From: Hemiscyllium ocellatum
Taxonomy: Eukaryota
NCBI RefSeq assembly: GCF_020745735.1
Contig: NW_026867863.1
Coordinates: 1,110,504-1,174,503, forward strand
Direction of reading: 5' to 3'
DNA length: 64,000 bases
A model generated the notes under the pieces. It searched no databases, was not told the DNA's origin, and saw only the letters and a list, made by a program, of their open reading frames with translations. Numbering within the stretch: the first letter of the stretch is position 1; each line of letters begins with the position of its first letter. Both the position numbers and the translations under genes were made by a program. Shown here piece by piece: positions 2,640 to 45,824 of this stretch.

Positions 2640-3895
2640 GTGGTAGGGAAACTATTGGAACTATTGAGGAGCAGAATTTGTCTTCATTTGCAAGATCAAT
2701 CAACAACTTCCAGCATGGTTTTATTGAGAGAAAATCATATCTTAACAATTTGGTGGTAGTTTTCAGACAGATAAATCAATGACCAAATGACAGCAATAAT
2801 CAGAGCCAATAGGATCAGAGTTAAATTTCCAAATTGGATCGAGAATTGGCTGAGTGGTCGGGAGCAGAGGATAATGGTCATAAGGTGTCTGCGTGACTGT
2901 AAATCTATGTCTCATGATGTTCTGCAGGGATCAGTGCTGATTTCCTTGCTGTTTCTCTTATATACCAATGATTGAGAATGGAATGTAGGAAGGTTAATCA
3001 GCAACTTCGGAGATGAAAGGAAAATTGTCATGTTGGTAAGTCATGAGCATGATAGTTTTAGAGCGCAGGACGTCATACAAGGATTGATTATATGTGAAGA
3101 GAAGTTGCAAATGGAAATCACTCTAGATAAGAGTAAAGTATTGCACTGCGGCAGAAGAAACTGCGAGGTATTACGTTTTGAATGGTGGAAACCTGGAAAT
3201 AGCTGAGGGCCATTGGTGTTCGCACCCACTGATCCCCTATATTAATGCGTCATATGGATAAAGAGGCGAGGAAGTTCGGGAGGATATTTGTTCATTTTAG
3301 GTGAGACATTGACAATGAAGAGTAGGGAGATGATGCTGGAACTTAATAACACATTGATTAGGCCATACTGAAGTGCTGTGTGCATGCTATCGACAGAATT
3401 TGATTACGCTGAAAGCAGCATTAATGAGCTTTGCAAGGATTTTGCCTGGGTTGAAGTATTTTATTTATGAAAAGATTAGACAGACGGGGGATATCCTTGC
3501 AGCAGAGGAGAATTAAGGAGAAGATGATTGCGATGTCTATACCTCAAATAATTCCAGGCAGGCTGAACTGGACAAAAACAATCCCCTTGAGGGAGAGATC
3601 AATGCCTCAGGGGCACAGGGTGAAGGCAAGGCCAGGAGTTTTAGGATGGATCTCAAGTCAAAACAATCTCAAACAGAGGGTGATGTGAGTCTGGAGCTCA
3701 GTGCTGACAAGTTATGTAGAGATTGAGCCCCTCATAATATGTATGAAATATTTAGATCCATACTTGCAAAGGCATGTCACACAAGGCAACGGATCAAGTG
3801 CTGGCACATGAAACTGGCACAGTTAGGTGGCTGTTATTTTTAGGTGTGGATTGGATGGACCAACGGGCCTTTTCCTGTGCTGTATAAAATGCTTC
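2640..3895 (+). mobile_element. Old degenerate CR1-type LINE, RT and 3' end
   Basis: WIENWLSGREQRIMV and LQGSVLISLLFLLYTND resemble the CR1 RT GVPQGSVLGPLLF..Y.ND motif; CR1-like 3' tail ends near 3890. Confidence 0.7.
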
Positions 3896-3973
3896 TGTGA
3901 GAATGGTTATCAATAATGCCTCATTCATGTTAATCACAGATGTTCTGTTGATCTCAGTTCCCACAACACTTAC

Positions 3974-4279
3974 CTGGACATGGCATTTCTTTGCTCTTGT
4001 GTGACCCGTTGTGTTGAACCTCACAGTAGATTTTGGTGGGGCAATCTACTGCTGACCCGGGCAGGGTTAACTGGCTGCTCTGGGTATAGGTTCCACTCTT
4101 GTTTCTTACTGATCGGTAAGTCTTCAATCCAGTCGTGATTAACTCCCCACCTTTCTTCCAGGTTACCTTGGTTACATCAGGGTAATAGTCCATTGCCAAA
4201 CAACCAAAGATCGGAGAACCGGTGTTGTGGTCCTCACAGGAGGAGACCAGGCCATAAAGCGTGGGGGGAGACGGTGTCT
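3974..4279 (-). CDS. IGHM: IgM heavy chain constant exon Cmu1 (cluster 1), open frame
   Basis: 306-bp phase-1/phase-1 exon between ctatcgtag| and |gtaagt. Translation (E)[101 protein letters not shown] has both Ig cysteines and the Trp, and matches the remembered shark IgM CH1 pattern. Confidence 0.93.
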
Positions 4280-4639
4280 CTACGATAGAAAGATCAATTG
4301 AGCACATTAGTTTCTGTTAATTTGTCCATATCAGTTACTCAAATGCATCTTCATTTGTAAACGTTTTCCAGCATCCTCCTGCTGAAGTCCACAGTATAAC
4401 TGGAGTTTATTTTTACTTCTTAACAGATGTTGATCATGATCTATATGTTTCCTCTTCATAAACATGCCCTCTATCTTTACCATTACCATATAATTTAGGA
4501 AGAAGAACATGCTGATCCCACCCCAGTAACTGTTTTAAAATCTTACCAACTGACACTTTCACTGGGTTGCAAGTGAAGAGCAGAGAGGTTTTACAAAATA
4601 CAAACCAAGGAAATGCGCATTCATCAAAATTCTACAGTG

Positions 4640-4985
4640 TGTGCAAACAGGCCATTTGGCCCAACATATCCACACCAACACTCTGAAAAGTAACCATCCA
4701 GGCTCATTGCTCTACCCTAATACTCTACATTTAACTCTGACTAATGGACCTAACATGCCAATCCCTGAACACAGAATGCTGAAACTGCGGACCTCACTTT
4801 CTCCCTGAACACAGCATGGCTAATTTACCCAGCTTGCACATCTATAGACCTTTCGAACAAACCCACACAGCCACAGAGAGAATGTGAAAACTCCACACAG
4901 ACAGTCACCCGAGGATGGAATAGAACCCGAGTCCCAAGTGCTTTGTTGTAGCAATGCTAACCACGGAAACAGTGTGCCACCCGAC
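4640..4985 (-). mobile_element. tRNA-derived SINE (HE1-like), shared with right arm 44330-44610
   Basis: Reverse complement begins gggtggcac...gtggttagcattgct...gggttctattcc (A/B boxes), then gactgtctgtgtggagtt core. Confidence 0.85.
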
Positions 4986-5569
4986 TAGGTACCGTGCTGC
5001 ATGAAATCAGAAACGAAATCAGATATTGCTGGAAAAACCCAACAGCTGGCAGTATTTCTAGAAAGAAATCAGAGTGAACAGTTCAGGTCCAGTGACTCTT
5101 TCTCATTTATCAAGGCAGAATGTTCTCTCAGGAAAGATGGTCACTGCAGCAGCAGCATGGGCAGGAGCTGAGCACTGGGACTTGGAGGAAGTCTATCATA
5201 GCTGGACTCATGTCAATTGTCTGAAAGTTGAAACTTCTAATTTAAAATTATCTGAATTCTGGAGGACTCTGAAAAATGGAAGAGCATTAGGGTTCAAAGG
5301 CTTTGAAGGGTTACAACTAACTGAGTTGACTATTTACGTAAATATGATTTGAAAAATTAACAAGTACTCTTTAACTTTAATACATTTCAAACTGACACGC
5401 AGTTCACCACCAAAACCATCATGTCTCAGACTGAGCCCTGCTCTCCCTCGCTGTCTAGACCTAAATTTCCACTCACATTGCCAAATCCTTCCGGTTACTC
5501 ACCCATTCATCCCCGGAATACACCACCCCTATCACAAGAAACACATCCAAGACAATCCATATCGGTCAT

Positions 5570-6530
5570 GTCGATGAGCAGAGAGACCTCGGTGTCCATG
5601 TGTATAGAGCCAGTCAGGTTGATAGGATTGCTAAGAAGGCATACATTGAGTTGGCTTTCATTAGTAGAGGGACTGTGTTTCAAAAGCATGATGTTGCCTC
5701 CTGTGGCGGGAAGGTTTTATGAGGAAAGCATGAGGTTCTTGAGGCTGTTTTTGTTTGAGTGGAGAAGTTTGAGAGGTAACTTAATTGAGAGATATACGAT
5801 AATCAGAGGGTTAGATAGGGTAAGCAGAGAGAGTATTTTTCCTTGGATGATGATGGCTAGCAGGAGGGGACATAGCCCTAAATTGAAGGCTGATAGGTAG
5901 AGGACAGGTGTCAGAAGTAGTTTCTTTAATCAGAGAGTAGTAAGGGTGTGGACGGCACTGTCTCAACAATAGTATATGTGTGAAATTTGAGGACATGTGA
6001 AATGTCATTGGATGAACATATGGGTGAAAATGAAATAGTGGAGGATAAAAGGTTTCAGATTGGTTTCACAGGTTGGCATGAAATAGACGCTTGAAGGGAC
6101 TGTACTGCAGTCTAATGTTCCATGTTCTACATTCTAGATTGATACATAATGTCAATCCCAGAGGTTTATATAATTATGAGGGGCATGGATAGGATAAATA
6201 GACAAAGTCTTTTCCTTTGTTTCAGGGAATCCAGAACAAGAGTGCATAGGTTTAACGTGAGAGGGCTAAGATGTAAAAGAGACCTAAGGGGGGATTTTTT
6301 CATGGAAAGAGTGATCCATGAATGGAATTAGCTGCCAGAGGAATTTGTGGAGGCAGTTACAATTTCAACATTTAAGAGAAATTTTAATGGGTGTATGAAT
6401 AGGAAGGGTTTGGAGGAATATGGGTCGGGTGCTGGCAGGTGGGACTAGATTGGGTTGGGATATCTGGTCGGCATGGTTTGGTGGCGTGAAGGGTCTGTTG
6501 CCATGCTGTACATCTATATGACCCTGTAAT
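5570..6530 (+). mobile_element. Two CR1 LINE 3' fragments
   Basis: RGNLIERYTIIRGLDRVSRESIFP and MRGMDRINRQSLF...RGDFFMERVIHEWN; ggcaggtgggactagattggg tail. Confidence 0.8.
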
Positions 6531-6948
6531 TCCACTGCTGCCACCCTGCGTCTGTCCATGTTGAATTTGGCCCTGACTGGACATGGCACCCTCATTTTTA
6601 CAACCTCTGTCAGAACCCCACTACCCAGGCATGACCTCAGCCCTTGGTCACTGATCTCTCATCTTATCCAAGTCAACGTGTGCACACTGCATCCTAGCTC
6701 CTTTCGCATTTGTCCTTTACCTCATTCCATTTCTCCAGACTCTGAGCTTTGCATTTTGACATCAAGTCCACCTGCCACTGCATTACAGTGACCTTCTGCT
6801 CTCGAAAGAGCCTGGCATCCTGCACATCTCTCCAATCAGCAGCGTGGCACTCTGCTGATCTCTCCGCTAACAAGCTTGGCAAAGATAGACCTCCTGTATT
6901 TCAACTCAAACGGTCCCTCATTTACCAAGCACAATTTGACGAAACTGT

Positions 6949-7135
6949 GGGCAGCACGGTGGCATAGTGGTTAGCACTGCTGCCTCGCAGCGTCAGAGAC
7001 CCGGGGTCAATTCCCACCTCAGGCGACTCTGTGTGGTGTTTGCACATTCTGCCCGTGTTTGCGTGGGTTTCTTCCGGTTTCCTCCCCCAATCCAATAATA
7101 TGCAGATAGGTGAATTGGCAATGCTAAATTTTCCG
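6949..7135 (+). mobile_element. tRNA-derived SINE (HE1-like), 5' part
   Basis: gggcagcacggtggcatagtggttagcactgctgcctc...ggggtcaattccc (A and B boxes). Confidence 0.85.
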
Positions 7136-7619
7136 TACTGGTAAATGGCCAGCCAAAGCCTACTAACTCAAACAATCTCATACTCCCAATCTATCCCCTC
7201 ACTTGCTTACCAACGTTGAGCAAACTGCACAATGAAGCCATAGAGTCATAAAGCCACATAGCACAGAACATTTCCTTTGTTATGCTTTCCTTTATTGGTC
7301 AGAGTACAGTTTGTCCATGCTGACCAGAGTTTTCAAATTAAACTAATTCCATTTGTCTGCTATTAGCACACATCCATCAGAACCTATCCAATTCCTATAC
7401 CTGTGCAAATGTCTTGTAAGTGTTGTACCTGTCTCTGCATTTACCACTTCCTCCGGCATTTCATTCCAATGTCTGGTACAGTTACAGAAAGAAGATTCAA
7501 CTCCTGCACTCAATGCTCTGACCAATGAAGGAGCATGTGCCAAACCTTCAACACACTGTCTACTTGAGGCAATGTTTTCAAGAATTTATGTATCTGAACC
7601 CCCTGGTCCCTGTATTCAA

Positions 7620-9535
7620 CATTACTACCCAGTGAGAGTATAAAGGAAGTAGGAGTATACTTAAGAGGGATATCAGGAGTGCAAAAAGGGGACATGAGAC
7701 AGCTTTGGCAAATAGAATTAAGGAGAATCAGAAGAGTTTTTAAAATTACATTACGGACAAAAAAGTAACGAGGGAGAGAATAGGGCCCCTCAATGATCAA
7801 CATGGTGGCTTTTGTGTTGAGCCGCAGAAAATGGCGAGAGTATTTTGCGTCAATATTTACTGTAAAAAAGGATATTGAAGATAAAGACATAGGGAAATGC
7901 ATAGTGACATCTTGTAAAATGTCCATGTTATTAAAGACATTGCTAGATATCTTGAAACGGGTAAAGATGGATAAATCCACATGACCTGATCAGGTGTAGC
8001 TTAAAACTCTGTGGGAATCTAGAGAAGTGATTGTGGGACCCTTGATGAGATATTTGTATCAACGATAGTTACAGGTGAAGAGCCGGATGACTGGAGGTTG
8101 GCTATCGTGTTGCCACTGTTTATGGAGGAAATGCCATAGAACTATAGACCAGTGAGTCTGACGTAGGTTGTGGGTAAGTTGCTGGAGGGAATCCTGAGGG
8201 ACAGGCTGTACCTGGATTTGGAAAAGCAAGGACTGATTAGGGATAGTCAACATGATGTTGTGTATGGGAAAGCCTGCCTCACAAACTTGACTGAGTTTTT
8301 TGAGGAATTACCAAAAAGGATTTATGAGGGCAGAGTGGTAGATGTGATCTATATGGACTTCAGGCAGGCGTTTGACAAGGTTCCCCATGTGATACTGATT
8401 AACAAGGTTAGCTCTCACGGAATACAGGGAGAACTCAGCATTTGGATACAGAACTTGCTCAAAGGTAGAAGATAGAGGGTCTTGGTGGAGAGTTGTTTTT
8501 CAGACTTGAGGCCAGTTCCCAGTTGAGTGCCACAAGGATCGGTACTGGGGCCTCTACTTCTTGTCATTTACATAATTGGTTTGGATGCCAGCATAAGGGG
8601 TACAGTTAGTAAGTTTGTTGATGACACCAAATTGGAGGTGTAGAGGACAACGGAGAGGGTTATCTCATTAAACAACAGGTCGTTGACCAGATAGGCCAAT
8701 GAGTTGAGAAGTGGCAGATGGAGTTTAATTCAGATAAATGCGAGGTGCTGCATTTTATGAAAGCAAATCTTAGCAGAAATTCTACACTTAATGGTCAGGT
8801 CCGAGGGAGTGTAGCTGAACATAGAGAACTTGGAGTGCACATTAATACCTCCTTGAAAGTCTAGTCGCAGGTAGATTGAATCGTGAAGAAGGCGTTTGTT
8901 ATGCTTTCCTTTATTGGTCAGAGTATTGAATGCAGGAGTTGGGAGGACATGTTGTGGCTGTATAGGACATTGTTTTGGCCACTGTCGGAACATTGTGTGC
9001 AATTCTGGTCTCCTTATTATCGAAAAGATGATGTGGAACTTGAAAGGGTTCAGAAAAGATTTAACAAGCATGTTGCCAGGATTGGTGGATGTGAGCTAGA
9101 GGGTGAAGCTGGACAGGCTGGGGCTGTTTTCCCTGGAACTTCAGAGACTTAGTGCTTGAACTTATACAGGTTTAGAAAATCCTGAGGGACATGGTTAGAG
9201 TAAATAGGCAAAGTTTATTTTCTCCTGGGTTCGGGGAGTCCAGAACTAGAGGGAATAGGTTTAGGGTGAGGGGGAAAGACACAAAAAGACATAAGGGACA
9301 ACTTTTTCACACAGAAGGTAGTACGTGTATGGAATGAGATGCCAGAGCAAGTGGTGGAGACTGGTACAATTGCAACATTTAAGAGGCATTTGGATGGCTA
9401 TATGAATAGGAAGTGTTTGGAGGGATATGGGCCATGTGCTGGCAGGTGGGACTAGATTGGGGTGGGATGTCTGGTCGGCATGGACGAGTTGGAACAAAGA
9501 GTCTATTTCCTTGCTCTACATCTCTATGACTATAT
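7620..9535 (+). mobile_element. CR1 LINE ORF2 (RT) and 3' UTR, frameshifted
   Basis: CLTNLTEFFEE, VDVIYMDFRQAFDKVPH, VPQGSVLG, SKFVDDTK and CVQFWSPYYRKD motifs; ctctatgactatatgac terminal repeat. Confidence 0.9.
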
Positions 9536-12500
9536 GACGCTGTAAGAATCGATGCTTCTGAACTCCCAGGTCTCTCTGTTGGACAACACGATCCAGTGCC
9601 CTACAATTATCTCTGCAAGTTGTGACCTGCTTTATCTTCTTTAAAGGTCGTTTTCATTTAATCTATACTCCAATTGCAACTCTTCAGCCCATTTGCCCAA
9701 TTGCCCAATTGATCACGATCTCTTTTAGATAACGTTCATTGCCAATTATAGCACCAATTTTGGTTTCATGTGCAAATTTACAAACCATGCCCCATTCGTC
9801 GTTCTCATGACTTTCAACCGATATTGTACCCTGTTTGTCTTTTTTTCCACATACTCGTAGTATATCTTCAGAATTGAAGGAATCTATCTCCTTCTTGAAA
9901 TCACTTAATGTTTTAACCTCAAGCAATTTAGTGGCGGAGAATTCCAATGGTTCACCATTCGTTCATTGAACAGTAAAGAATCGGGCTCAATTTTATCGGC
10001 TGTTGGAAAGACTGGTGAGCAGCAGGATTTATGATGATCCCATGAATACAATAGCATTCTAAAGTGACCGAGGTGCCTAATTCAGCTTCTAATTTGTATT
10101 CTAACATGTCCCTGGCAACATGTTTCAAAATTGTGATCTTTGAGGATAAGGGCGTGCATGCATGAAAATGCTTCATCTGAATGATTACCTCCAAATTAGA
10201 CTCCACCTTGACTTGCAACTATTTCCCTGCCGTTTTACTTTTCCTCAATCACAGCCATGGGACTCACTTTCTAACAGTGCTGTGAATGCTAATACCACAC
10301 GAGCTTCAGCAATTCAAGTATGCTGAGGACAACTGGTTTTTCAATGCGATATAAAAGTTTGATACTTCCACACCTGTCCGCCGGAAGAATTGAAAAGTAT
10401 TTGAGGCACTTGCGTGCCCACACAAGATGACATGTTGAATGGTTTAATTCTGTGTGGTTTGACTGCGTTTTCACTCAACTAACAGAGCTATTTCGTAATC
10501 ATATAATGGAAATGAGGATTCCCTCATTTTTAGCACGGCAATCACACATTATGCTTTCCTGGAATAAAGAAGTACCATTAGTGGAATACGAGACTGGGAT
10601 GTTACAGCCTCATTGTGTCCCTTTAAATACTCACAGAAATACCTTTCAAAAACGGTGTCTTCCTTTGTTATGGGCAGTCGAACCATTAAATTTGGGATAG
10701 ACTTTGCTTGCAAAACAACGGTAGTAAAGAGTTTTAGCCAAAGAGAGGCGTCTGCAGTTAGTGCGCAGATGCACCATGATATAAGTAAGTGGTGGATCAG
10801 CTCGAGGGCTTAGTGCTGTCCTCCTCCCCATCCCTATCATGTGTCAGTCGTTAGGTTAGCACTGGCGGTGAACAATTTGTATTAAAATATTTTAGCAAAT
10901 TAATTGTTTCACACATTCTTTAAAAAGTAATTCTGTTGATTACAGGTATTTGGAATGGGAGCACTGACATTCACTACTTGACTGATCAAAATAACTCTCA
11001 CCCAAATACAGCAGGCACTGCACTCTGGAGTGTGCTGTTACTTCATGATGCTTTCTTGTAAAACATGATTCTCTGATAATAAATATCTCTGAACATTCTC
11101 AATTTGTTTAAGTGCATTTTCTCTCTGAAGAACTTGTTTAATCGAACAGAACATTTTTAGAAATGAATCAAAAAACTTGGAATACTAGAAAACTAAAATA
11201 AAGACAGAAATTTCTGAAGAAACTCAGCAGGTCTGGCAGCTCCTGTGGAGAGAAAGCGAGGTTAACGTTTCACGTCGAGAGACACCCCTCACCCCGCTAC
11301 CCCATCCCCTCCCGCTTCAGGAAATTGTTTTCATGCTATTGGCACAAGAACTCACACCTGTTGAGTTAGACAGCGGTTACGTTTGCTTGACTGCAGTGAG
11401 AAAAGCATTCTTAGCAGAGGTAGTGGATGAGCCGAGATAACAATTGAAGACCACTTGAAAAGCTATCACCATATGATGCAAGTGTTGGAATCAGCGGAAC
11501 CCCCATTGTACTGAACAATCATATTCAGCCACAGCACCAGTTTAATATAAAGTAAAACAACCTAGGCATAATCTCATCAATTATGCTTCAAAACAATACA
11601 TTCTGGATTAGTTATACGTGATATTATTTGAACAGCAGTTATAAAGCTGGGAATTATTAAAGGACTTACTCGATTAACCCCAGCTAGATGTGCTCAAAAT
11701 CTTGTGAACAAATATTGATCTCGAAAAAGCTGCTAAACGCCAAAGTTTTGTTTAATATCTAAGAGATACAAGTCAGGACAGAGATGAAATAGATTTCACC
11801 TGCCTCTGTGAGTGGAACTCCAACAAACACACTAACAACTCAATCTGCTTTTTTGCCCAGAATTAACCGGATAAGAGTTGGTATTTTATACTTCTCAACC
11901 AGGCTGTAAGTGAACACAGGCCGCTTGCCATGGAGTCAGGCACACTACAATAATATCACAGCAGACCTGAACACAATGAGCTTCACACTATCTCAGAGAA
12001 GACAGCCCACCTGTTTGACAGTACATACACGATGTTAAGTATTGATACTTTCCAACAACAAGGGATTGTTCCAGAAAGTTTGTACACGAAAGTAACATTG
12101 CAACAATTATCAAAGAATACTTTGACAGCAGCTCCGAATTGTCCAAATTCTCTGAGGAATAAAAAGTGGGATTACATTACCATCAATTCACTGACACTGG
12201 ATTTTAACCTAGAACTCCCTTCCCTAGAACCCCTATGAATGTTGCTGCCCCACGTGGTCTACTTAGTTTGATATAGATGAAAATGTTTTGAAATGCATTA
12301 TGACCGTTGCCAGTGATATTAAACGCTAATAGGTTTTCAAATAGTAAGATGCAAAATAATTTTTGATTCTACATTGTGCTACATGTCCATGACCAACTGA
12401 GGCACAAAAGGAAATAATCAGCATGTTTCCCTCTTCATCGCTCAATCAAGTATCCCTTATTGCCAAGAACCAATATCAAAACATTTGGAATCTGCCTGCC

Positions 12501-13184
12501 TTTTGTTACTGTGGTATTCGTTCTGATTGGAATAACTTAGCCACGGCACTCAGTTCTGAGGCACCCAATCAAATATTGCAGTTCTGGCAGATAAAAGTCG
12601 ATTTGAAGAGCAAGATAAAATTGAACTATCGAAAATTCAGGTACCCAAACCAGACAATTTACAAATGGTCAGGACCCGTTGACAAGTTAGTCGGAGATAA
12701 CACTGAAACGAAATGTACAACAATCTGTATGTTAGCAGATATATCTGCTCAATTCCTCACATCCAATGTATTCACTGCAATTGAACATTCATCAGAGGAA
12801 CTAACCAAAGGATTAATGCAAACGAGAACGTGTTCACAATGAACATAGATAATCACTGAGTCAATAAACTTAATAAGTCGTTGTAATTAGCAATGGTGAG
12901 ATATGTCAACAATTAATGCAAAGCTCCGGAGGAAATGGATAATACTCCAAATAGTTTTTACATATCTGAAAGCATTTCTTGAACTGTGGAGATTTTACAT
13001 GAACTGCATGACGTTAGTCCTGCATTACAGTGTGGAAATGCATGTCTGTTGAAGAAATTAGGGCAAATTCATTTTCTTGTTAGCAGCTTTTCATGTACGA
13101 AAATGTTTTTTTTTTAAAAAAGTGTGAATTGAAAACATGCTTCTCTCTGGAGTTGCCCGCTTTAACTGAGTGGCTAAGTAAATG

Positions 13185-35699: not shown

Positions 35700-35935
35700 T
35701 TAGATTCTGATTTTTCTTGTTTGATTCTGTTGAATTGAGTTGACTTGGATTCCGACTTTGTTTTTACTTGGTTTTGTTGAATCACACTGATTACCTTTTT
35801 TAAATTGTTTTATAAGATTCAGTTGAATTGAGTTGGTTGGATTCTGATTATCTTTCATTTAAATCTGTTGTTTTCAGTTGATTTTATTATGAGTTTATTT
35901 TATGATTCAGTTGCAGTGAGTTGATTGGATTCTTA
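35700..35935. repeat. Degenerate tandem repeat in JH-Cmu intron (cluster 2)
   Basis: tctgttgaattgagttgacttggattcc, tcagttgaattgagttggttggattct, tcagttgcagtgagttgattggattct. Confidence 0.75.
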
Positions 35936-37677
35936 TTCATTTTGTGAAATTGATCTGCGTTTTCATACTTTCAGTAATTCGTGTTTTCTTTCTGGTGAGG
36001 AGATGGTCTCTCTGGATTACTTTAATTACGAATTTTTGTGAGGTTCTTTGTTTTTGCTGAACCGTTGCTACATTTATTAAATTCATCTGGCATTTTTTTT
36101 GCTGCTTGATTGAAAACATTACGTCTGTTTGTAACTGTCTGAAAACGAATTTAAGGCAGAAACACGGAAGTGAAAGAAATGAGAAAAAAGTATTTTAGTG
36201 CATTATTTTTTTAAAAAAAAACCTCAGCTCTAATTGTAAACTAAGTCAAGTTTGTTTCGAGTTACATCTTTCAAAGTAAAATTTGGGATTAAAATCTGAA
36301 ACTGCAGAATTGATCAGGTTACGTTATTGAAATGAACTTGCTATAATTTAAAATAATAATGTCATAATGTTTGCCTATTGAACTAACTTTATTTTGATCT
36401 CAATCTGATTAATCATTATATGACTTCAACTGCTGTACTGTGCACAACACAAGAATGGCATGACCGCAAAAGGTGTACAGATTGGAAATAAATTGAACTG
36501 TTTCCGAAAGCTTTACAGCTTAAAGTATTAAGTAAATCACCTCACAAACAAGGCTGCTGTTATTATTTGGTATTTCTATTCAATTTGATCATTCTCTGCC
36601 TGGAATCTGTACAACTTTGTTTTGATTTTTTTTTGTGAGGTAACATCATGTTTTTGGTTGGAAATGTTTGCAGAGCCCGTTCTGCTGCAATCCCATCGGT
36701 TTCCTCAGTGTTGTCATTTGTTGATCTTTGCTCTAATGAGGAGGAGGGACTGTAACATTAATTTTGTTACATTTGGGAAACTGTTTCTGGTTTCTACATT
36801 GTTATTGCACTGTTAACATGGTTGGTGTCAGTGAACTGCTCCAGTTATCTCATTCGATGCAATCAGCATGCCAGTTGAATCTTCATAAAGCCTAGTATTA
36901 CGTGAAAGGCAAATCGCAATGTTTTTGGAAATGAAGGAAAAAACGATACCTTAGGGTGCGAGTTTTAGTGAGAACATAGAAAGTTACGGCACAGTTCAGG
37001 CCCTTCGGCCCTCGATGTTGCACCGGATTATCACACCAATCTGAAGCCCATCTAACCTGCACTATTCCATGAACAATGATGACTTAAATGTAATGAGAAG
37101 TAATAACTAAGGATTAATCTAGTCCACTATTTACAATCCAAAGTCAAAACTCAACTATCCAGTTGAATCACAAGTTCTGTCTTCCAAACATTTGGAAGTC
37201 ATAGAGAAATGTAAATAAAATTTCAAAAGTATGTTGTTCTAATAGTTCTTGCTCTTGAGCAAAGATGCCATGACTATGTTGTAATTAGTCAAGAATCACT
37301 TTTCAATTCCGCTGTACACTACACACAGTTTTCTGGTTGGAAAAGATCATTGGCAAAGACCATTTGGAAATTCTGCCCAATTCGATGAAGAACAGACCAG
37401 TTTCACTGCTTTGATCAGTTGCACAAGTAAAACGAGTCAATTAATTTTTATGTCGCTGATTAAACTGGAATTGCAGGAAAAACATAAAACAGTGACTGAA
37501 TGATTTAATCTGCACAGTGCTTTAGGTGTTCCCAATCCATGCGTTTTAAATGAATAGTTACATTTTACAACAAAATTTCAATTGAAGAGTCATTCTTTCG
37601 GAAACAACTGCTATGTGGAATTATGTGATCAAGGCCAAATTTTTAATTAGTTAAAATAATTCACGCATTAACTCATA

Positions 37678-38575
37678 GGGCGGCATGCTGGCTCAGTGGT
37701 GAGCATTGCACAGCACCACGGACCGCATTTCGATTCCATTCTCGGGTGACTACCTGTGTAAAATTTGCACATTCTCCCCATGTCCGGGATTCTTCTGTGT
37801 GCTCCAGTTACCTCGCCCCCCCCACCCCCGCCACAACCCCCCCCCCACCCCCCGCCACCCAAAGTCACTAAGGTGTTCAGGCTAGGTGAATTGGCTGTGC
37901 TAAATTAAACATTGAATTCAGGGATGTGTAGGTTATAGTGCATTAGACAGGAGTAAATATAGCGTAGGTGGAATGTGTTACTTACTGTTCGGAGGGTCGG
38001 TGTGGAATTGTTGAGTACAGTGGCCTTTTTCCATACTGTTGGAAATCTACTGTAAAACAGTAGGAATGCTTGTTGCGAATGCAGAGAACGTAGTCTGCGT
38101 CGACGTGTTCAGACATATGCAGAGTTCATAAATTTGCAGAAGACATGAACGAGAGGATATCAGAGCACGTTGTGTATTCAGACTGAAAATAGAGGGTTTT
38201 TTAATTAATGTACTTGACCAATTTTTGCAATGTACTTAACATTAGTTAAGTGTGGCGATCATTTAGATTCGATTTCCTACACTATGGAAACGGGTCATTG
38301 TCCCTTAAATTACACACCGATTCTCTGAAGACTAACCCACACAGACATATTACCCTACCCTATATACACCCCAGATCAATGCACCTAACACTATGGATGA
38401 TTCAGCATTACCAATTCACTTGGCCAGCACATCTTTCGATTGTGGGAGGAAGCCCATGCAGACACAGGTGAGAATGTGTAAACTCCACACAGACAGTCAC
38501 CTGAGGCTGGAACCAAGCACGGGAATCTGAATCTGAAAGTCAACAGTGCTCATCACGAAACCACCACGCCGCCCA
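37678..38575. mobile_element. Two tRNA-derived SINEs (37678-38045 +, 38280-38575 -)
   Basis: A/B-box heads; orthologous to the SINEs at 13780-14108 and 13185-13497. The first carries a poly-C insertion at 37816-37860. Confidence 0.82.
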
Positions 38576-41500
38576 TATTTACTTAGACCTCATTTAAAGT
38601 GGGCAACTCCAGACAGAAGCAAGCTTTCAATTTATACCTTTTTAAAACATTTTCGTATGTTGCAAAACAGCTAACAAGAAACTGACCCACCCATTGTAAA
38701 GAAAACCTGATAGTAAATACTTGCCCTATTTGTTTCAACAGAAACGCATTGCCACACTGGAATGGAGTATTGGCTTTGTCCAGAATATGTAAAATCTTCG
38801 AGTACAAGAAATGTTTTCAGAATACGTAAAAATAATTTAAAGAAGAATCCATTTCCTTTGCACCTGTGCATAAATTTGCAATATGTCCTACATCAATAAT
38901 GTTGTTAATTACAATGACTTATTTAGTTGATTAAATCGGTGATTATCTATGTTCATTGTGAACCCATTCTCGTTCACATTAATGGGTATTATCTTTTTCA
39001 TTCCTACGATGAATGTTCAATTACAGTGAACATATTGGACCTGAGGAATTGAGCAGATATATTGGAAAGACCAAGATTGTTGTACAATATGTTTCGGTGC
39101 TATCTCCGACTAACTTGTCAACTGATCCTGACCATTTGTAAGTTGTCCGGTTCCAATACCTGAATCTCCGACAGTTCAATTTCATATCCCATTTCAAAAC
39201 CATGCTTATCTGCCAGAAATAGAATATTTGATTAGGTGCCTCTGAATTGAGAGCCCTGGTCATGTTTTAGTATCAGAACGAACACATCAGTAACAAAAGG
39301 CAGATTGCAAGAGTGTTTCAATTGGTTGTTGGCAACAAGGGATATATAATTGAGCGAGGCAGAGGAAAATATGCTGCTTATTTTCGTTGTGCCTCGATTG
39401 TCCGGGACGTGTTTAGTGACACAATGTAGGATCAGAAATTAATTTGCATTGTATTATTTGAAAACATTTTGCCAGCTTTTAATGTCACTGGAAAATGTCA
39501 TAATACAGTTCAAAATGTTTTAATCTATTTCTAACTAAGTAGACCATCTGGTGCATCAACATTAATGAGTAAGAGGAAGGGAGTTCAACGTTGAAGTCCA
39601 GTGACAGTGAATTTATGGCAGTGCAATTCATAGTTTTATTCCTCTGTAGTTCCCACAGACTTTGGACAATTCAGACTTACAGTCAAAGTATTCCTGGAAA
39701 ATTGTTGCAATGTTAATTTCATTGCATAAACATTCTGGAACAATCCTTATTTGTTGGAATGTGTTAATAATTAACATGGTTTATGCACTGTAAAACAGGT
39801 GGGCTGTGCTCTCCGATATAGTGTCGAGCTCATTGTGTTCAGGTCTGCTGTGATATTGTAGTAGTGACCCTGACTCCATGCCACGTGGCCTGTGTTCACT
39901 TACAACCTGTTAGAGACGTATGTAACATCATCTCTAATCAGTTTCATTCGGGGCAAAAAACCAGATCGAGTCGTTTGGGAGTTTTTTTGGAATTCCATTC
40001 ACAGAGGCCGTTGAAATCTATTCAATCGCAATCCTGATTTGTGTCTCTTAGATATTAAACAACTTTGGCGGTTAGCAGCTCTTTCCAAGTCCATTTTTGT
40101 TCACAAGCTTTTGGACATCACTAGCTGGGGTTAATGGAATAACCCCTCAAATAAATCCCAGCTTTTAAATTACCATTCTAACAATAACATGTATAACTAT
40201 TCCAGAATGAATTGCTTTGAAGCATTTTTGTTGAGATCATGCCTAGGTTGTTTTATTTTATATTTAACCAGTGCTGTGGTTGAATTTGACTGTTCAGTGC
40301 AGTGGGGGTTCCGCTGAATCCAACACTTCCAGCAGATGGTGATAGCCTTTCAACTAGTCATCAGTTGCTATCTTACGCATTCCAGTACCTTTGCTAAGAA
40401 TCTTTTTGCAACAGCAGTCAAGCAAACGTAATCGCTGTCTAATTCAACAGGTGCCAAAAACATGAAAACAATTTTTTGAAGGGGGATCTCGGAACGCGCA
40501 ATGTCAACCTTACTTTCTCTCCAGAGCCGCCACGAGACCTACTGAGAATCTTCAGAAACTTCTGTCTTTATTTTGGTTTGCTAGCAATCAAAGTTTGTTG
40601 TTTCATTAAAAAGAAGTTCTGTTCGATTAAACAAGCTGTACAGAGAGAAGATGCGTTTGAAGAAATTGAGAATGTTCAGAGATATTTAATATCAGAAAAT
40701 CATTGAATGTGAGAACCCTGATTTCAAGCTGTATTTTCACAAGAAACTGTTTCGTGAAGTAACAACACACTCCAGATTGCAGTGACTGCTGTAATTGGGT
40801 GGGAGTTGTTTTGATCACTCAAACATAGAACGTCAATGCTCGCGTTCCAAATAATCAAAGATGTTTTAAGAATTTGTGAAACAATTAATTTGTTAAAATA
40901 TTTTAATAAAAATTGTTCAGTGTCAGTGCTAGCCTAATGAAGGACACAATTATAGGAAAGTGCAGGAGGAGGGCACTCAGCCCCTCGAGCTGTTCCCCCA
41001 TTACTTAGATCAGGGTGCATCCGCGCACTATTTTCTCAGGCCTCTCTTTGGCTAAAACTCTTTTCCATCTTTGACTAGCAAGTAAAACCTATCCATAGTT
41101 CAATGATTTTACTTTCCTTAACAAAGGGAGAAACCGTTGTTTAAAGACATTTCTGTGAGAAGTTAAAGTGACCCATTGAGGCTGGAATTAATTGGTCGTG
41201 AAAATAAGCTTTAAATCTCTGATAACTTACAATTTAAACATCCCAATCACCATATTCCATTAAGTTTAGATTATATTTCTTTATTCCAGGGAAGTATAAT
41301 GTGTGATTTCTGCTTTAAAAAATGAGGCAATCTTCATTCCCACAATATGATTAAGAAGTAACACTGTTTGTTCAGAGAAAAAGAAGCCAAACTACACAGA
41401 AAGAAACCATTCGCAATTCGTGTAAATACTTTTCAATGCCTCCAGTGATTATCTGCATCTCTAGACAAGCGTGGAAGTGTCAGGCTTTTCCTTGAGAAAC

Positions 41501-41589
41501 AAATCATCATCAACTGACTTGAATTGCTAAAGTTTGTGTGGGGCAGTGTTTTCTCGAGGAATAAGACTGTATTAATTTCTGGCTCTGTA

Positions 41590-43095
41590 ACTTACGAAGG
41601 AGTAAAAATTGGCTTTAATAGAGTGGTATGTGCTTCTTGTCAGATGTGGGAGTTTAAAGAGAGATTAAGCATTATTGCAGATTATATCTGTCATAGGTCC
41701 TGTTTGATGCGAATCTTACCAGATCGAATGGATCGGTTGGAGAGACAGTTAGAAGCAACAGTATCTCATGGATGGCAGTTATAGGAAGGGGCGATGTCTC
41801 AGATACTGTCACATAGATGGGTTAACTCCAGGAAATGTAAGATAGGTAGGCACCTAGTGCAGGAGTCTTTTGTGGTTGTACCGATTCAATCAGGTATGCT
41901 GTTTTGAAAAATGTAGGGGGTGATGGAATCTCAGGGGAACATAGGACGAACAGCCAAGTTTCTGGTATTGAGACTAGGTCTAATGCAATGAGGGTTATAT
42001 CGGCTTCAAAGAGATCAATTGTGTTCGGGGATTCTGCAATCCGAGTGCAGAGATACCTTTCTGTGACCAGCAGCGAAAAAGCAGAATGGTGTGTTGTTTC
42101 CCCGGTGCTAGGATCAATGATGTCTCAAAGAGAGTGCAGAAAGTTCTCATGGGGGAGAGGGGACAGCAAGAGGACATTGTCCACTTTGGAACCAAGGACA
42201 AAGGAAGGGAAAAGATTGAGATTATGAAGGGAGATTACAGAGAGTTAGGCAGAAAATATTAAAGGAGGTCCTGGAAAGTAGTAATATCTGGATTATTCCC
42301 AATGCTACGAGCTACAGACGGCAGGAATATGAGGATAGAGCAGATGAATGCGAGTCTGAGCAGCTGGTGTATGGGAGAAGGATTCATAATTTTGGATCAT
42401 TGGAATTTATTTTGGGTTAGAAGTGATATGGACAAGAAGGACGGATTGCACCTAAATTGGATGGGACCAATATTCTGACCGGGAAATTTGCTAGAGCTGA
42501 ACGGAAGGATTTAAACTAGTAAGGTAGGGAGAGGGGTGGTGTTGTGACCCAGGGAGATTGTGAGGAAAGAGGTCAATCTGGCACTAGTGCAATTGAAAAC
42601 AGAAGCGAGTCAAACAGTCAGAGCAGGCAGGGACAAAGTAGGACGAATAAATTAAACAGTGTTTATTTCATTGCAAGGGGCCTAACATGGAAGGCAGGTG
42701 AAATCAGTGCATGGTTAGGATCATGGGACAGGGATATCATAGCAATCACAGGTACATGGCTCAGGGATGGTCAGGACTGGAAGATTAATGTTCCAGGATA
42801 CGAATGCTACAGGAAGAATAGAAAGGGGGGCAAGGGAGGAGGGTGATTGATATTTTTGATAAGGGATAACATTACAGCTGTGCTGAGGGTGGATATTCCC
42901 GGAAATACATCCAGGGAAGTTGTTTGTGTGGAACTGAGAATTAAGAAAGGGATGATTATGCGCTTTGGTTTTGTATTCTAGACCCCCTAATAGATGGAGG
43001 GATATTGAGAAACAAACGTGTAAGGATACCTCAGCTATATGTAAGAATAATAGGATGGATATGATAGGCGATTTTAACTCTATAAGCATATACTA
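41590..43095 (+). mobile_element. CR1 LINE ORF1 (Zn knuckle, SGNH esterase-like) and start of ORF2 AP-endonuclease
   Basis: VCASCQMWE, IVFGDS and cfpgarindv-like motifs; DIIAITGTWLRDGQDWKINVPGYECYRKNR. Confidence 0.85.
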
Positions 43096-43745
43096 GGAAA
43101 GCAAAGTTAAAAATCACTCAACACCATGTTATTGTCCAGCAGGTTTAATTGGAAGCACACTAGCTTTCGGACCGACGCTCCTTCATCAGGTGATTGTGGA
43201 GTGCTCGATCGTAACACAGAACTTATAGCAAAACTTTTCAGTGTGCCATAACTGAAATTATACATTGAAAAATTGATTGACTGTTAAGCATTTCATCTGT
43301 TAGAATACAGTGATAGTTTAACTTCTTTCATGTGTAAATCACAAAAGACTCCCTATCCACCCTATCGAACCCTCTGATTGTCTTATATGTCTAAATTAAG
43401 TCACTTCGCAACCTTGTTCTCTCAAACAAAAACAACCTCAATTCCCTCATCCTTTCCTCATTAAACCTCCCTCCACACCAGACAACATTCTGTTAAACCT
43501 CCACTGAACTCTTTCCAAAGCTTCCACATTCTTCCTATAATGTGGTGACCACAATACTCCAAGTACGGCCACACCAGTTTTTTGTACAGCTGCAGCACGA
43601 TGTCATGGTTTTGAAACTCAGCCCTTCCAATGCAAGCCAACTCAAAGTATGACTTCCTAACATTCCTATCAACGAGCCTGGCAACTTTTAGGGATCTATG
43701 TACATGGACGCAAGGATATCTCTGCTCATCTACCCTACCGATATG
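43095..43745 (-). mobile_element. Penelope tail (43095-43340) and CR1 RT 3' fragment (43345-43745)
   Basis: Reverse complement cacctgatgaaggagcgtcggtccgaaagctagtgtgcttccaattaaacc; the CR1 piece is orthologous to the one starting at 5570. Confidence 0.7.
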
Positions 43746-44329
43746 GATTGCCTTGGATGTGTTTCTTGTGAAAGGGGTGCTGTACTCCGGCCACGAATTG
43801 TGTGTAACAGGGTAAGGTTTGTCAATGTGTGTGGAAATTCATGTCTGGATAGGGAGGGAGAACAGTTGTTTGTCTGTGACAGATGAGAGTTTTGGTAGTG
43901 AACTGCGTGTCAGTTTGACAGTTATTAAAGTTAAAGAGTACTTTTATTTTTTCAAATCAGATTTACGTACATTGTCGGCTCAGTTAGCTGAAATGCTCCA
44001 AAGTCTCTGAACCTTTATGAGTCCTCCATTTTTCAGAAGCCACCAGACTTCAGATAATTGTAAATTACAAGTTTCAACCTCCAGACAATTGGCATGAGGT
44101 CAGCAGTGACAGACATCCTCCAGTCTCAGTGCTCAGCTCCTGCCTGTGCTGCTGCTGCAGTGACCTTCTTCCCAGAGAGGACATTCTGCCTTGTTTTGAT
44201 AAATGAACAACGATCACTGGACCTGAACCATTCACTTGGATTTATCGCCAGAAACACTGCCAGCTTTTCGGGTTTGTCAAGCAATTCCAAGCAATTTTGT
44301 TTGTGATTTCCAGCTGCACAGTGCATAGT

Positions 44330-44610
44330 GGGGTGGCGTGCTGGTTCGGTGGTCAGCATTGCTGCCTCGCAGTCGTAGGGACTCTTGTTCGATTCCAGCC
44401 TCGGCTGATTGTCTGTGAAGAGTTTGTACTTTCTCCTCATGTCTGTCAGGGTTTCCTCCCCATGTGCAAACTGGGTGAATTCGTCATGTTGCATTTAGGG
44501 ATTGGGAGGTTAGGTCCATTAGTCAGGGTGAAATGTGTCTGGATAGGTTATTTTTCAAAGGGTGGTTGTCGACTTGTTGGGTCAAATGGCCTGTTTGCAC
44601 ACACTGTCGA
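44330..44610 (+). mobile_element. tRNA-derived SINE, shared with 4640-4985
   Basis: gggtggcgtgctggttcggtggtcagcattgctgcctcgcag...gttcgattcc. Confidence 0.82.
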
Positions 44611-44958
44611 ATTTTGATGAATCCGTATTTACTTGGTTTGTATTTTGTGAAACCTCTCCGTTCTTCACTTGCAACCCAGTGAAAATGTCAGTTGGTGAGA
44701 TTTTCAAATAGTTACTGGTAGTGGGATCAGGATGTTCTTCTTCATAAATCTTATGGTAATGGTCATGTTAGAGGGCTTGTTTCTGAAGAGGGAATCAATA
44801 CAGCATGATCAACAACTGGTAAGAAACAAAAATAAACTCCAGTTACGCTGTAGACTTCAGCAGGAGCATACTGGCAAACTTGTACAGCTGAGGATACATT
44901 TGAGTAACTGACAAGGACAAATTAACAGAACCTAATGTGCTCAATTGGTCATTCTATC

Positions 44959-45254
44959 CCGTCTCCCCCACGCTTTATGGCCTGCTCTTGTCCTGTCATG
45001 ACCACGATACCGGTTCTGTGATCTTTGGTTGTTTGGCGATGGACTATTTCCCTGAAATAACCAAGGTAATCTTTAATAAAGGTGGAGAGCTAATCACGAT
45101 TGGATTGAAGACTTACCCATCAGTGGTATACAACAAGGGAACCTACACCCAGCGCAGCCAATTAACCCTGCCCGGGTCAACAGTAGATTACCCCAGCAAA
45201 ATCTACTGGTTTAACACAGCGGGTCGCACAAGAGCAAAGAAATGCCATGTCAGG
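44959..45254 (+). pseudogene. IGHM: Cmu1 pseudo-exon (cluster 2)
   Basis: [35 protein letters not shown]...[23 protein letters not shown] 9-bp deletion removes the acceptor AG, plus a 1-bp loss in the C run, Trp>Phe and a 4-bp deletion after the second Cys; donor gtaagt retained. Confidence 0.92.
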
Positions 45255-45824
45255 GTAAGTGTTGTGGTAAATTAGATAAACAAAACATCTGTGATTAACA
45301 TGAGTAAGGCATTATTTATAACATTTTTAAAAGATTCGCCTTATACAGCACAGGAAAAAGCTCTTTGGTCCATCCTATAAATAACAGCCACCTAACTATT
45401 CCAGTCTCATGTGCCAGCACTTGATCCATTGCCTTGTGTGTCTTGCCTTTGCAAGTATGGATCTAAATTCTTCACACGTATTATGAGGGGCTCATCCTAT
45501 ATTTAAAATATAAGGAAATAATTACGATACTCGTTCCTAATATCCATTCCTCAAATAATAATATTCTTCAATAATAGATTAAAAGAAAAAGTAATTTGAA
45601 ATGTTCTGACAGTCAGTGATGAAAGAACATGTGCAGTTAGAATTTGTAAGTTCCTGCTGAGAATCAGTAATGCTCTAATAGATACAGCTAACAGAGTCAC
45701 GTTTGATAAATGTCTGACTACTTCCTGAACATGTAATGGTCTCTAATTACATAACTTAGATGCAGATAGATCGGACTGGGTCAATTAACTATTTAAGTGT
45801 GTTCTCTCGTCTTTATATTCGTAG

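What the first reader, a model, noticed from the sequence alone, without database searches (positions are those of the whole stretch)
3722..45497. Two IgM clusters head-to-head as a ~42 kb diverged palindrome, leaders only ~17 kb apart
Seen: full reverse-complement collinearity from 4 kb upstream of the leader to just past Cmu1, with a unique ~8 kb spacer. Divergence (roughly 75-80% identity by eye in the V exons) argues against an assembly duplicate. Established: cartilaginous-fish IgH is organised as V-D-D-J-C mini-clusters; from memory, nurse shark clusters were reported as widely spaced. Inference: a close, divergently oriented pair is unusual and records an inverted-duplication route to cluster multiplication.
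Basis: partly seen in the sequence, partly recalled or inferred. Interest (0 to 1): 0.72.

Follow-up and report, generated by a model that had tools for sequence, protein, structure and literature searches.

The report
Head-to-head pair of dead IgM clusters
Two neighbouring shark IgM antibody gene clusters really do lie head-to-head as an old, diverged mirror repeat, but both are broken pseudogenes, and the long mirror homology is what any two of this genome's ~50-kb IgM repeat units would show, so this is a modest structural curiosity.

Summary
The inverted repeat is real. Left arm 3724-21738 matches right arm 30049-45494 in reverse complement at 74-79% identity, and the leaders lie 16.7 kb apart.

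Three parts of the description need correcting:
- The mirror does not end past Cmu1. The right cluster has a clean 8.7-kb deletion of Cmu2-4. Homology then resumes and runs to at least window -20 kb on the left and 63.7 kb on the right.
- The 8.3-kb spacer is not unique. It is the normal far-upstream part of the right cluster's unit, shared at 77-82% with at least 11 other IgM clusters. The only true breakpoint is 21738/21739.
- Both clusters are dead, germline-joined VDD-J genes.

The genome matches the epaulette shark paternal assembly. It holds at least 80 Cmu1 exons, embedded in ~50-kb repeat units that often sit 37-80 kb apart in either orientation. So a close or inverted pair is not exceptional here.

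The two arms are sister lineages in two independent ML trees (98/96 and 96/94; AU p 0.018-0.037). This supports one very old inverted duplication, or a duplication followed by inversion.

The whole pair was later copied to scaffold C217 (94-96% identity). It also recurs in five to six ~99.8% copies, some of which may be assembly redundancy.

The scan has already noted other IgM palindromes in this genome. Interest is low to moderate.

The parts
3724..21738 (-). Left arm inside the window: an IgM cluster unit on the minus strand, cut off 4.3 kb upstream of its leader. It continues beyond the window start to at least C477:1090506.
   Evidence: blastn self-comparison; collinear with canonical cluster C17a
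21739..30048 (+). The 'spacer'. It is the conserved far-upstream 8.3 kb of the right cluster's repeat unit and is contiguous with the right arm. 21738/21739 is the only real breakpoint.
   Evidence: Collinear at 77-82% with the upstream flanks of canonical clusters; in C17 the match runs to 97894577 and the arm homology starts at 97894578. Canonical homology stops near the position equivalent to 21739. All 5 sampled 31-mers of 21700-21777 are present in runs of a second study.
30049..63674 (+). Right arm: an IgM cluster unit on the plus strand, mirror homology followed to 63674
17360..17408 (-). Left leader exon (ATG at 17408-17406, GT donor at 17359)
   Evidence: sequence read directly
16931..17232 (-). 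Left V exon. Pfam V-set, but with an in-frame TAA at 16960-16958 (Glu to stop in KIEDTAIYYC).
16883..16930 (-). D1- and D2-derived sequence fused to V (16930-16911), followed by the D2-type 3' RSS: CACTGCA, 12-bp spacer, ACAAAAACC (16910-16883). This is a germline VDD joint.
   Evidence: Compared with the unjoined D1 and D2 of C17a
16488..16574 (-). Left JH with its 23-RSS (nonamer AGTTATTAT, heptamer CACTGTG at 16542-16536, J coding 16535-16488, YLDDWGQGTMVTVTS)
3957..4316 (-). Left Cmu1 exon (open frame, conserved Cys and Trp intact)
   Evidence: Pfam C1-set 1e-13; 85% aa identity to canonical Cmu1
1..949 (.). Window part of a ~1.9-kb hairpin-like insertion (arms -903..-233 and 277..949, 95.5% complementary) lying just upstream of the left Cmu2 exon
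34153..34201 (+). Right leader exon relic; start codon is ACG instead of ATG
34330..34606 (+). Right V exon relic: in-frame TAA at 34338-34340, conserved Trp replaced by Ser, FR3 deletion, no Pfam hit
34607..34641 (+). Right D-derived GTTGGTA followed by a decayed 12-RSS (CACGGCA, 12-bp spacer, GCAGAACCG). Same VDD-J layout as the left arm.
35131..35183 (+). Right JH relic (heptamer CACTGGC, coding LDYWGEGIMVTVTS)
44958..45271 (+). Right Cmu1 exon relic with a frameshift and a stop near 45209-45242
45493..45494 (+). Junction of the 8.7-kb deletion that removed Cmu2, Cmu3 and Cmu4 with the secretory tail (canonical C17a positions 6782-15514)
   Evidence: the deletion is shared by the C217 paralog
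45818..45962 (+). Right TM1 exon relic (frameshift, Trp to Cys)

Best explanation
The window holds two neighbouring copies of this genome's ~50-kb IgM-cluster repeat unit in opposite orientation. The genome is, by assembly statistics, that of the epaulette shark.

The right unit is complete at its upstream end: the 8.3-kb 'spacer' plus 4.3 kb plus the leader. The left unit is cut off 4.3 kb upstream of its leader and joined at 21738/21739 to the natural upstream edge of the right unit.

Both clusters are of the germline-joined VDD-J type, and both are pseudogenes.
- Left cluster: stop codon in V, weak RSS, frameshifted Cmu2, and lost Cys/Trp in Cmu2-4.
- Right cluster: no ATG, stops and deletions in V, decayed RSSs, frameshifted Cmu1 and TM1, and Cmu2-4 deleted.

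The two arms descend from one ancestral cluster unit by a very old inverted duplication, or by a duplication followed by inversion of one copy. They differ by about 0.20 substitutions per site.

The pair then behaved as one unit. It was copied to scaffold C217 (about 0.045-0.05 substitutions per site) and very recently into several 99.5-99.8% copies.

Shown: anatomy, defects, extent, sharing with other clusters, and tree topology. Inferred: the order of events and the mechanism.
For: - Mirror blocks and extent.
- Exons and defects.
- Clean deletion at 45493/45494 against a canonical cluster, shared with C217R.
- The spacer is collinear with canonical upstream flanks and contiguous with the right arm. 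Canonical homology ends near the 21739 equivalent.
- The far-downstream part of the arm is also shared with other cluster flanks.
- L+R grouping: 98/96 on 2042 columns around Cmu1; 96/94, or 99/99 without long rows, on 2425 columns upstream of V. The alternatives are rejected by the AU test at p 0.018-0.037. L+R is a clade when rooted on C188 (94/89).
- Both arms and both C217 paralogs share the short V-to-J distance and the same V | D1-derived GTGGGTA/GTTGGTA | 12-RSS layout, whereas canonical C17a and C5 are unjoined.
- Copies.
- Junction 31-mers are present in a second study's runs.
- Genome identity: total size, scaffold count and N50 match PMC10587355.
Against: - By raw identity each arm is closer to canonical clusters (80-86%) than to the other arm (78-81%).
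- The stem uniting the arms is short (0.010-0.017) against arm branches of about 0.09-0.11, so long-branch attraction is not excluded. The AU p-values are only moderately small.
- The V-D-D junctions of the two arms differ by gaps of 6 and 10 bp. Another lineage (C181) is also VDD-J, so the joined state is not a clean shared-derived character.
An inverted duplication therefore cannot be told from a tandem duplication plus inversion.
- No reads could be laid.
Confidence: 0.7

Rival explanations
1. Chance juxtaposition. The two arms are simply two members of the large IgM-unit family that ended up adjacent and inverted, by inversion or by independent insertion. No duplication event is specific to this pair, and the tree grouping is long-branch attraction between two fast-decaying pseudogene lineages.
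For: - Every tested part of the arms and the spacer is shared with many other clusters, at identities equal to or higher than arm-to-arm identity.
- The stem branch is short.
- Other adjacent clusters in both orientations exist in the genome.
Against: - Two non-overlapping regions give the same grouping with 96-99% support.
- AU tests reject both alternatives.
- The grouping survives removal of the long rows and rooting on C188.
- The regions used are mostly non-coding, so pseudogene decay should not speed them up.
- Both arms share the VDD-J layout.
Confidence: 0.2
2. Assembly artefact. The head-to-head arrangement, or at least the breakpoint at 21738/21739, is a misjoin on a minor unplaced scaffold rich in near-identical repeats.
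For: - C477 is a 1.5-Mb unplaced scaffold.
- It carries three ~99.8% copies of the unit. Two of them flank a 500-N gap and overlap over 49.5 kb, a pattern typical of redundancy at gaps.
- No reads could be laid.
Against: - Arms 74-79% identical cannot be confused by an assembler.
- The same arrangement, with the same spacer, is assembled independently on C402, C336, C1648 and twice more on C477. It is also present in a 94-96% diverged form on C217.
- All sampled 31-mers across the breakpoint occur in runs of a second study and sample.
Confidence: 0.04
3. A functional arrangement. The divergent pair is kept because it does something: shared upstream regulation, inversional V(D)J joining between the clusters, or a donor role in gene conversion.
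For: The pair stayed together through a later duplication (C217) and recent amplification. The left cluster keeps a J 23-RSS and an open Cmu1 exon.
Against: - Every coding part of the right cluster is broken.
- The left V has a stop, its Cmu2 is frameshifted, and Cmu2-4 have lost structural Cys/Trp residues.
- The arms diverge at about the same rate as the non-coding flanks.
- Copying of linked dead DNA needs no function.
Confidence: 0.04

Closest known systems
Cartilaginous-fish IgM heavy-chain mini-clusters (V-D1-D2-J-Cmu1-4-TM), as in horned shark and nurse shark
   Same: Leader plus V exon, D-derived sequence, JH with a 23-RSS, a J-C intron of about 10-12 kb, then Cmu1-4 and TM exons in the left arm. 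The clusters belong to a large multi-copy family in the genome.
   Different: Both clusters are non-functional. The right one lacks Cmu2-4. In this genome the clusters sit in ~50-kb repeat units, often 37-80 kb apart. Nurse shark was reported to have about 15 loci at least 120 kb apart (PMC2435157).
Germline-joined shark Ig genes (VD-J, VDD-J and VDJ forms; e.g. PMC2193156 for joining in germ cells)
   Same: V is fused to D1- and D2-derived bases with no RSS between them. The D2-type 12-RSS and the J 23-RSS are retained, and V to J is only about 400-500 bp against about 1.2 kb in unjoined clusters.
   Different: Here the joined genes are dead. The joined state is carried by both arms of an inverted pair and by their C217 paralogs, so the joining is likely to predate the duplication (inference).
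Large diverged inverted duplications (palindromes) formed by fold-back or by duplication plus inversion
   Same: Two reverse-complement arms flank a segment present once, and the arms are sister copies in trees.
   Different: - Only one true breakpoint is visible (21738/21739).
- The other edge of the 'spacer' is ordinary contiguous sequence.
- There is no arm-to-arm homogenisation: identity is 74-79%, unlike sex-chromosome palindromes.
- No junction microhomology is recognisable after this much divergence.
Other IgM cluster palindromes noted by this scan in the same genome (s1-195771 tail-to-tail 32 kb; s1-191628 head-to-head)
   Same: Adjacent IgM clusters in inverted orientation. My own hit tables show tail-to-tail pairs on C53 and C17 and a head-to-head pair on C126.
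   Different: This pair is much more diverged than the near-perfect C53 fold-back described in that note. It also has the shortest head-to-head distance seen: 16.7 kb between leaders, against 45 and 72 kb.

Membership tests
Shark IgM heavy-chain cluster | Split leader plus a V-set V exon | tested here: met
   Left: ATG leader 17408-17360 and V exon with Pfam V-set 2.2e-9. Right: homologous relic (63% aa, about 80% nt) with no Pfam hit.
Shark IgM heavy-chain cluster | Separate D1 and D2 segments flanked by RSSs between V and J | tested here: not met
   No free D segments. V to J is about 400 bp (left) and about 490 bp (right), against 1.2 kb with D1 and D2 in canonical C17a and C5.
Shark IgM heavy-chain cluster | Cmu1-Cmu4 exons followed by TM exons | tested here: inconclusive
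   Left: all present (Cmu2-4 and TM1 lie just outside the window at C477:1109494-1103491) but damaged. Right: Cmu2-4 deleted; Cmu1 and TM1 are relics. TM2 was not mapped.
Shark IgM heavy-chain cluster | Open reading frames and usable RSSs (a functional gene) | tested here: not met
   Left: TAA in V, Cmu2 frameshift, and Cys/Trp losses in Cmu2-4. Right: ACG start, TAA in V, frameshifts in Cmu1 and TM1, mutated heptamers.
Germline-joined VDD-J Ig gene | V coding end fused to D1- and D2-derived bases without an intervening RSS, with the D2 3' 12-RSS and the J 23-RSS retained | tested here: met
   Left: TGCGCAAGAG | CAGTGGGTA | GGTGGATATT | CACTGCA-12-ACAAAAACC, and the J 23-RSS. Compared with C17a D1 (ATACTACAGTGGGT) and D2 with the same 12-RSS. 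The right arm and C217R have the same layout, decayed.
Inverted duplication (palindrome) of one ancestral unit | Arms collinear in reverse complement well beyond chance | tested here: met
   About 13 kb aligned inside the window at 74-79% identity, and more outside it.
Inverted duplication (palindrome) of one ancestral unit | Arms are each other's closest relatives among all family members | tested here: met
   Topology: L+R at 98/96, 96/94 and 94/89 when rooted; AU p 0.018-0.037 against the alternatives. Caveat: raw identity to canonical clusters is higher than arm-to-arm identity, and the stem is short.
Inverted duplication (palindrome) of one ancestral unit | Homology specific to the pair, with a unique central spacer | tested here: not met
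   The arms and the spacer are all shared with many other clusters at 77-86% identity.
False duplication in the assembly | Near-identical copies, typically flanking gaps or lying on small unplaced scaffolds | tested here: inconclusive
   This does not apply to the two arms (74-79% identity). It does apply to the ~50-kb unit. Copies at C477:800001-853254 and 853755-910000 flank a 500-N gap. Copies differ by 1.35-2.3 substitutions per kb, about the species' nucleotide diversity of 0.002. Read depth could not be obtained.

The most novel reading that the evidence does not exclude
The head-to-head pair of dead, germline-joined clusters is an evolutionarily stable 'module'. It has been copied as a whole at least twice: once long ago to C217, and very recently into three or more ~99.8% copies in tandem and inverted order. 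On this reading, current growth of the shark IgM family proceeds by amplification of multi-cluster ~50-kb blocks, including inverted ones. Such dead pairs might then serve as sequence donors for gene conversion into working clusters.
Probability: 0.12. Interest if true: 0.5.

Novelty: new member of a known kind. Interest (0 to 1): 0.3.

Why it matters
It gives a concrete, dated-in-order example of how the multi-cluster IgH system of sharks grows and decays. The order is: a germline-joined cluster, an inverted duplication, inactivation and loss of Cmu2-4 in one copy, and then re-duplication of the pair.

It also shows that in the epaulette shark assembly IgM clusters are embedded in ~50-kb repeat units. 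These units frequently lie 37-80 kb apart in either orientation, unlike the picture recalled for nurse shark.

It has no bearing on antibody function, because both genes are dead. It also warns that long 'palindromic' homology between Ig clusters in this genome is the default for any inverted neighbours.

Tried and rejected
- **Reads.** One local pairwise comparison of whole 50-kb copies (run_python) did include them as part of the window file.
- **Genome-letter allowance.** I also could not fetch 10-kb V regions for 20 clusters; smaller pieces were used instead.
- **Strict RSS scan.** It found nothing in either arm. Reading the sequence showed weak or decayed RSSs.
- **Junction microhomology.** I looked for microhomology or a fold-back signature at 21738/21739 and recognised none.
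- **Right cluster as a working short membrane form (V-Cmu1-TM).** Rejected: no ATG, stops and frameshifts in every exon.
- **Nurse shark as the source.** Rejected on cluster number, J-C distance and assembly statistics.
- **Dating with the pedigree mutation rate.** At 7e-10 per site per generation, about 0.10 substitutions per site per arm corresponds to about 1.4e8 generations. That seems implausibly old, so I give no absolute age.
- **Literature.** Searches found no description of IgM cluster orientation in this species.
Full report
**1. Observation**

An inverted-repeat scan and a BLAST of the window against its own reverse complement confirm the mirror. The blocks are:
- 3724-5691 with 45494-43603 (78.3%)
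- 10437-14697 with 41412-37091 (73.6%)
- 14689-16790 with 36974-34875 (73.9%)
- 16798-19622 with 34729-31866 (79.3%)
- 19926-21738 with 31861-30049 (78.2%)

There are 8,310 bases between the arms, and the window has no N runs.

Each arm carries a V exon and a Cmu1 exon on opposite strands.
- Left V (16961-17263 frame) hits Pfam V-set at 2.2e-9, and left Cmu1 (3957-4316) hits C1-set at 1e-13.
- Right Cmu1 only just reaches C1-set (4.5e-4), and right V gives no Pfam hit.

The leader starts are at 17408 and 34153, 16.7 kb apart. Arms only 74-79% identical cannot be an assembly duplicate.

**2. Where the description is incomplete**

With 20 kb added on the left and 10 kb on the right, the mirror goes on: window -6555..-10539 pairs with 45497..49437 (80%), -10544..-12483 with 49819..51721, -14548..-15866 with 60212..61566 (81%), and -18410..-19997 with 62114..63674.

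The apparent end 'just past Cmu1' is a deletion edge. Against a canonical cluster (C17:97905001-97935000), the right arm matches up to 234 bp past Cmu1 (window 45494). It resumes at canonical position 15515 (window 45493). This is a clean 8.7-kb loss of Cmu2, Cmu3 and Cmu4 with the secretory tail.

The left arm is collinear with the canonical unit throughout. It carries Cmu2 (C477:1109109-1109494), Cmu3 (1106937-1107326), Cmu4 (1106099-1106518) and TM1 (1103491-1103634) just outside the window.

Inside the J-C intron, left 5692-10436 and right 41413-43602 do not align. The left stretch contains a weak reverse-transcriptase fragment, below Pfam's threshold.

**3. The spacer is not unique**

A search of the genome with 21739-30048 finds it collinear, at 77-82% along almost its whole length, with the region upstream of at least 11 other IgM clusters.

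In C17 the match to the end of the spacer stops at 97894577. The match to the inner end of the arm starts at 97894578. The spacer/right-arm boundary at 30048/30049 is therefore ordinary contiguous sequence.

The spacer is the far-upstream 8.3 kb of the right cluster's unit. The left unit is truncated 4.3 kb upstream of its leader. The only rearrangement breakpoint is 21738/21739.

In a tandem pair on C55, homology to this window stops close to the position equivalent to 21739. That position therefore looks like the natural edge of the repeat unit.

I saw no microhomology at the junction.

**4. The arms are ordinary family units**

- The 4 kb upstream of the left leader matches more than 25 other clusters at 80-82%.
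- The Cmu1 region matches them at 80-82%, against 78.3-78.5% arm-to-arm.
- The 2.4 kb upstream of V matches at 82-86% (right arm) and about 82% (left arm), against 80.6% arm-to-arm.
- Even 60.2-63.7 kb, 15-18 kb downstream of the right Cmu1, matches the downstream flanks of dozens of clusters at 80-86%.

IgM clusters in this genome therefore sit in repeat units of about 50 kb. Any two units placed in opposite orientation would show this 'palindrome'.

**5. The genome and its cluster map**

The assembly has 3,983,466,396 bases in 1962 sequences, and its contig C53 is 83,580,160 bases long. The epaulette shark paternal assembly is described with 3,983,483,121 bases, 1963 scaffolds and N50 83,580,160 (PMC10587355). 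The difference in bases and in one sequence would fit an omitted mitochondrial genome; that last point is my inference.

The window lies on a 1.5-Mb unplaced scaffold (C477).

The genome holds at least 80 IgM-type Cmu1 exons and a similar number of V exons, on many chromosomes and small scaffolds.

Reading those tables, and excluding this family, I count about 13 neighbouring pairs under 100 kb apart:
- 8 tandem: for example C55 at 42.8 kb, C26 at 37 and 53 kb, C17 at 49 kb.
- 3 tail-to-tail: C17 around 98.70/98.73 Mb, C53 around 6.12/6.14 Mb, and C8.
- 2 head-to-head: C126 with V exons 45 kb apart, and C53 at 72 kb.

Closeness and inversion are thus common here. Only the 16.7-kb head-to-head distance is special to this family. 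The nurse-shark figures (about 15 loci, at least 120 kb apart; PMC2435157) do not transfer to this species.

**6. Gene state**

*Left cluster.*
- Normal ATG leader and splice sites.
- The V exon has an in-frame TAA at 16960-16958, replacing the Glu of KIEDTAIYYC.
- After CAR come 20 bases of D1- and D2-derived sequence (CAGTGGGTA GGTGGATATT). These are followed directly by a weak 12-RSS (CACTGCA-12-ACAAAAACC).
- About 350 bp further on lies a J with a 23-RSS. This is the VDD-J germline-joined form.
- For comparison, canonical C17a and C5 have free D1 (ATACTACAGTGGGT) and D2 (ending in the same 12-RSS), with V to J of 1.2 kb.
- Cmu1 is open.
- Cmu2 has a frameshift and a Cys-to-Phe change. Cmu3 has Trp-to-Arg and Cys-to-Tyr changes. 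Cmu4 has a Trp-to-Leu change.

*Right cluster.*
- ACG in place of ATG.
- TAA at 34338-34340, the conserved Trp replaced by Ser, and an FR3 deletion.
- The same V | GTTGGTA | 12-RSS layout, with decayed heptamer and nonamer, and J heptamer CACTGGC.
- Frameshift and stop in Cmu1, Cmu2-4 deleted, and a frameshift in TM1.

Both are pseudogenes.

Other clusters in the genome show every joining state: unjoined, V-DJ, VD(D)-J and VDJ. This agrees with the long-known germline joining in sharks (PMC2193156).

**7. Are the arms sisters?**

An ML tree of 2042 columns around Cmu1, mostly intron, from 21 clusters groups the left type (window, C1648b, C217L) with the right type (window, C217R) at 98/96. The stem is 0.013, and the arm branches are about 0.09 and 0.107.

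An independent 2425 columns upstream of V give the same grouping at 96/94, or 99/99 without two long rows.

AU tests reject trees that put either type outside the pair: p 0.018 and 0.020 for the first region, 0.037 and 0.036 for the second.

Rooted on the distant C188 cluster, L+R is a clade at 94/89. This uses a subset of the first region's columns and is not independent of it.

The higher raw identity to canonical clusters is explained by their short branches.

I therefore accept, with moderate confidence, one ancestral unit duplicated in inverted orientation, or duplicated and then inverted. The event is very old: the arm-to-arm path is about 0.20 substitutions per site.

The shared VDD-J layout fits this. 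It is not decisive, because the junctions differ by gaps of 6 and 10 bp and the C181 lineage is also VDD-J.

**8. Later history**

A second head-to-head pair lies on C217: V exons at 2042990(-) and 2061402(+), Cmu1 exons at 2031644(-) and 2074668(+).
- It has the same spacer (95-96% identity).
- It has the same right-arm deletion.
- It is 94-96% identical arm for arm.

So the pair was copied as a whole, at about a quarter of its own age.

There are also near-identical copies:
- C477:800001-853254 and C477:853755-910000, in reverse orientation, 99.7-99.8% identical over 50 kb or more.
- Further copies on C402, C336 and C1648.

The first two flank a 500-N gap and overlap over 49.5 kb. The three C477 copies differ by 1.35-2.3 substitutions per kb with few indels. 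That is about the species' nucleotide diversity of 0.002.

Some of these copies may be assembly redundancy. A more diverged member on C1648 (V 92% aa) argues that at least part of the amplification is real.

**9. Support for the assembly at the breakpoint**

Indirect support comes from two sources:
- The same junction is assembled in six places, and in diverged form on C217.
- All five sampled 31-mers of 21700-21777 occur in runs of a second study and sample of the same organism. In addition, 86-94% of the sampled words of 19000-24900 are present in eight runs from two studies.

**10. Verdict**

The inverted-duplication inference survives its own test. The claims of rarity, a unique spacer and a defined outer end do not hold.

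The object is a pair of dead, germline-joined IgM clusters, a new member of known kinds. Earlier notes of this scan describe other IgM palindromes and joined clusters in the same genome, including this pair's other copy.

Noticed in passing
window 1-949 and C477:1109600-1110503 (window -903..0): A ~1.9-kb hairpin-like insertion with two ~670-bp arms 95.5% complementary (-903..-233 against 949..277) sits about 50 bp upstream of the left Cmu2 exon. A related copy (86%) lies about 10 kb past the window end, at window-equivalent 73496-74000. It may be a foldback-type transposon.
   Followed up: partly
window 29717-30300 and 31266-31863 (also 19923-20506 and 21488-21738 in the left arm): Each IgM unit carries a pre-existing ~580-bp inverted repeat pair, about 78% identical and about 1 kb apart, 2.4-4.6 kb upstream of the leader. 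Canonical clusters have it too. The left arm is truncated inside the distal copy.
   Followed up: partly
G000 contig C9, about 6.5-24 Mb: More than 60 open 116-aa exons about 39% identical to Cmu1, in both orientations, spread over about 18 Mb. They are probably another large Ig-type C1-set gene array, possibly light-chain clusters.
   Followed up: no
loci L050-L059 (C17, C55, C54, C130, C181, C205, C5): The genome holds IgM clusters in every joining state: unjoined V-D1-D2-J (C17a, C5), V-DJ (C130), VD(D)-J (C181, this family), fully joined VDJ (C55, C54), and a V-to-J distance of about 800 bp in C205.
   Followed up: partly
C1648:76626-157633: On this small scaffold the head-to-head pair is followed by a partial spacer (first 6977 bases) and a second left-type cluster. 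That cluster's V is only 92% identical in protein (YYCTR instead of YYCAR). This is a tandem re-duplication of spacer plus left cluster.
   Followed up: no
window 8167-8472 (+) and 27870-28502 (+): Weak reverse-transcriptase (RVT_1) fragments, below Pfam's threshold: one in the left J-C intron insertion and one in the spacer.
   Followed up: partly
whole IgM family: With the published pedigree rate of 7e-10 per site per generation, the divergences among cluster paralogs (0.1 per lineage and more) imply implausibly many generations. Either these regions evolve faster than the genome average, or the family is extremely old.
   Followed up: no
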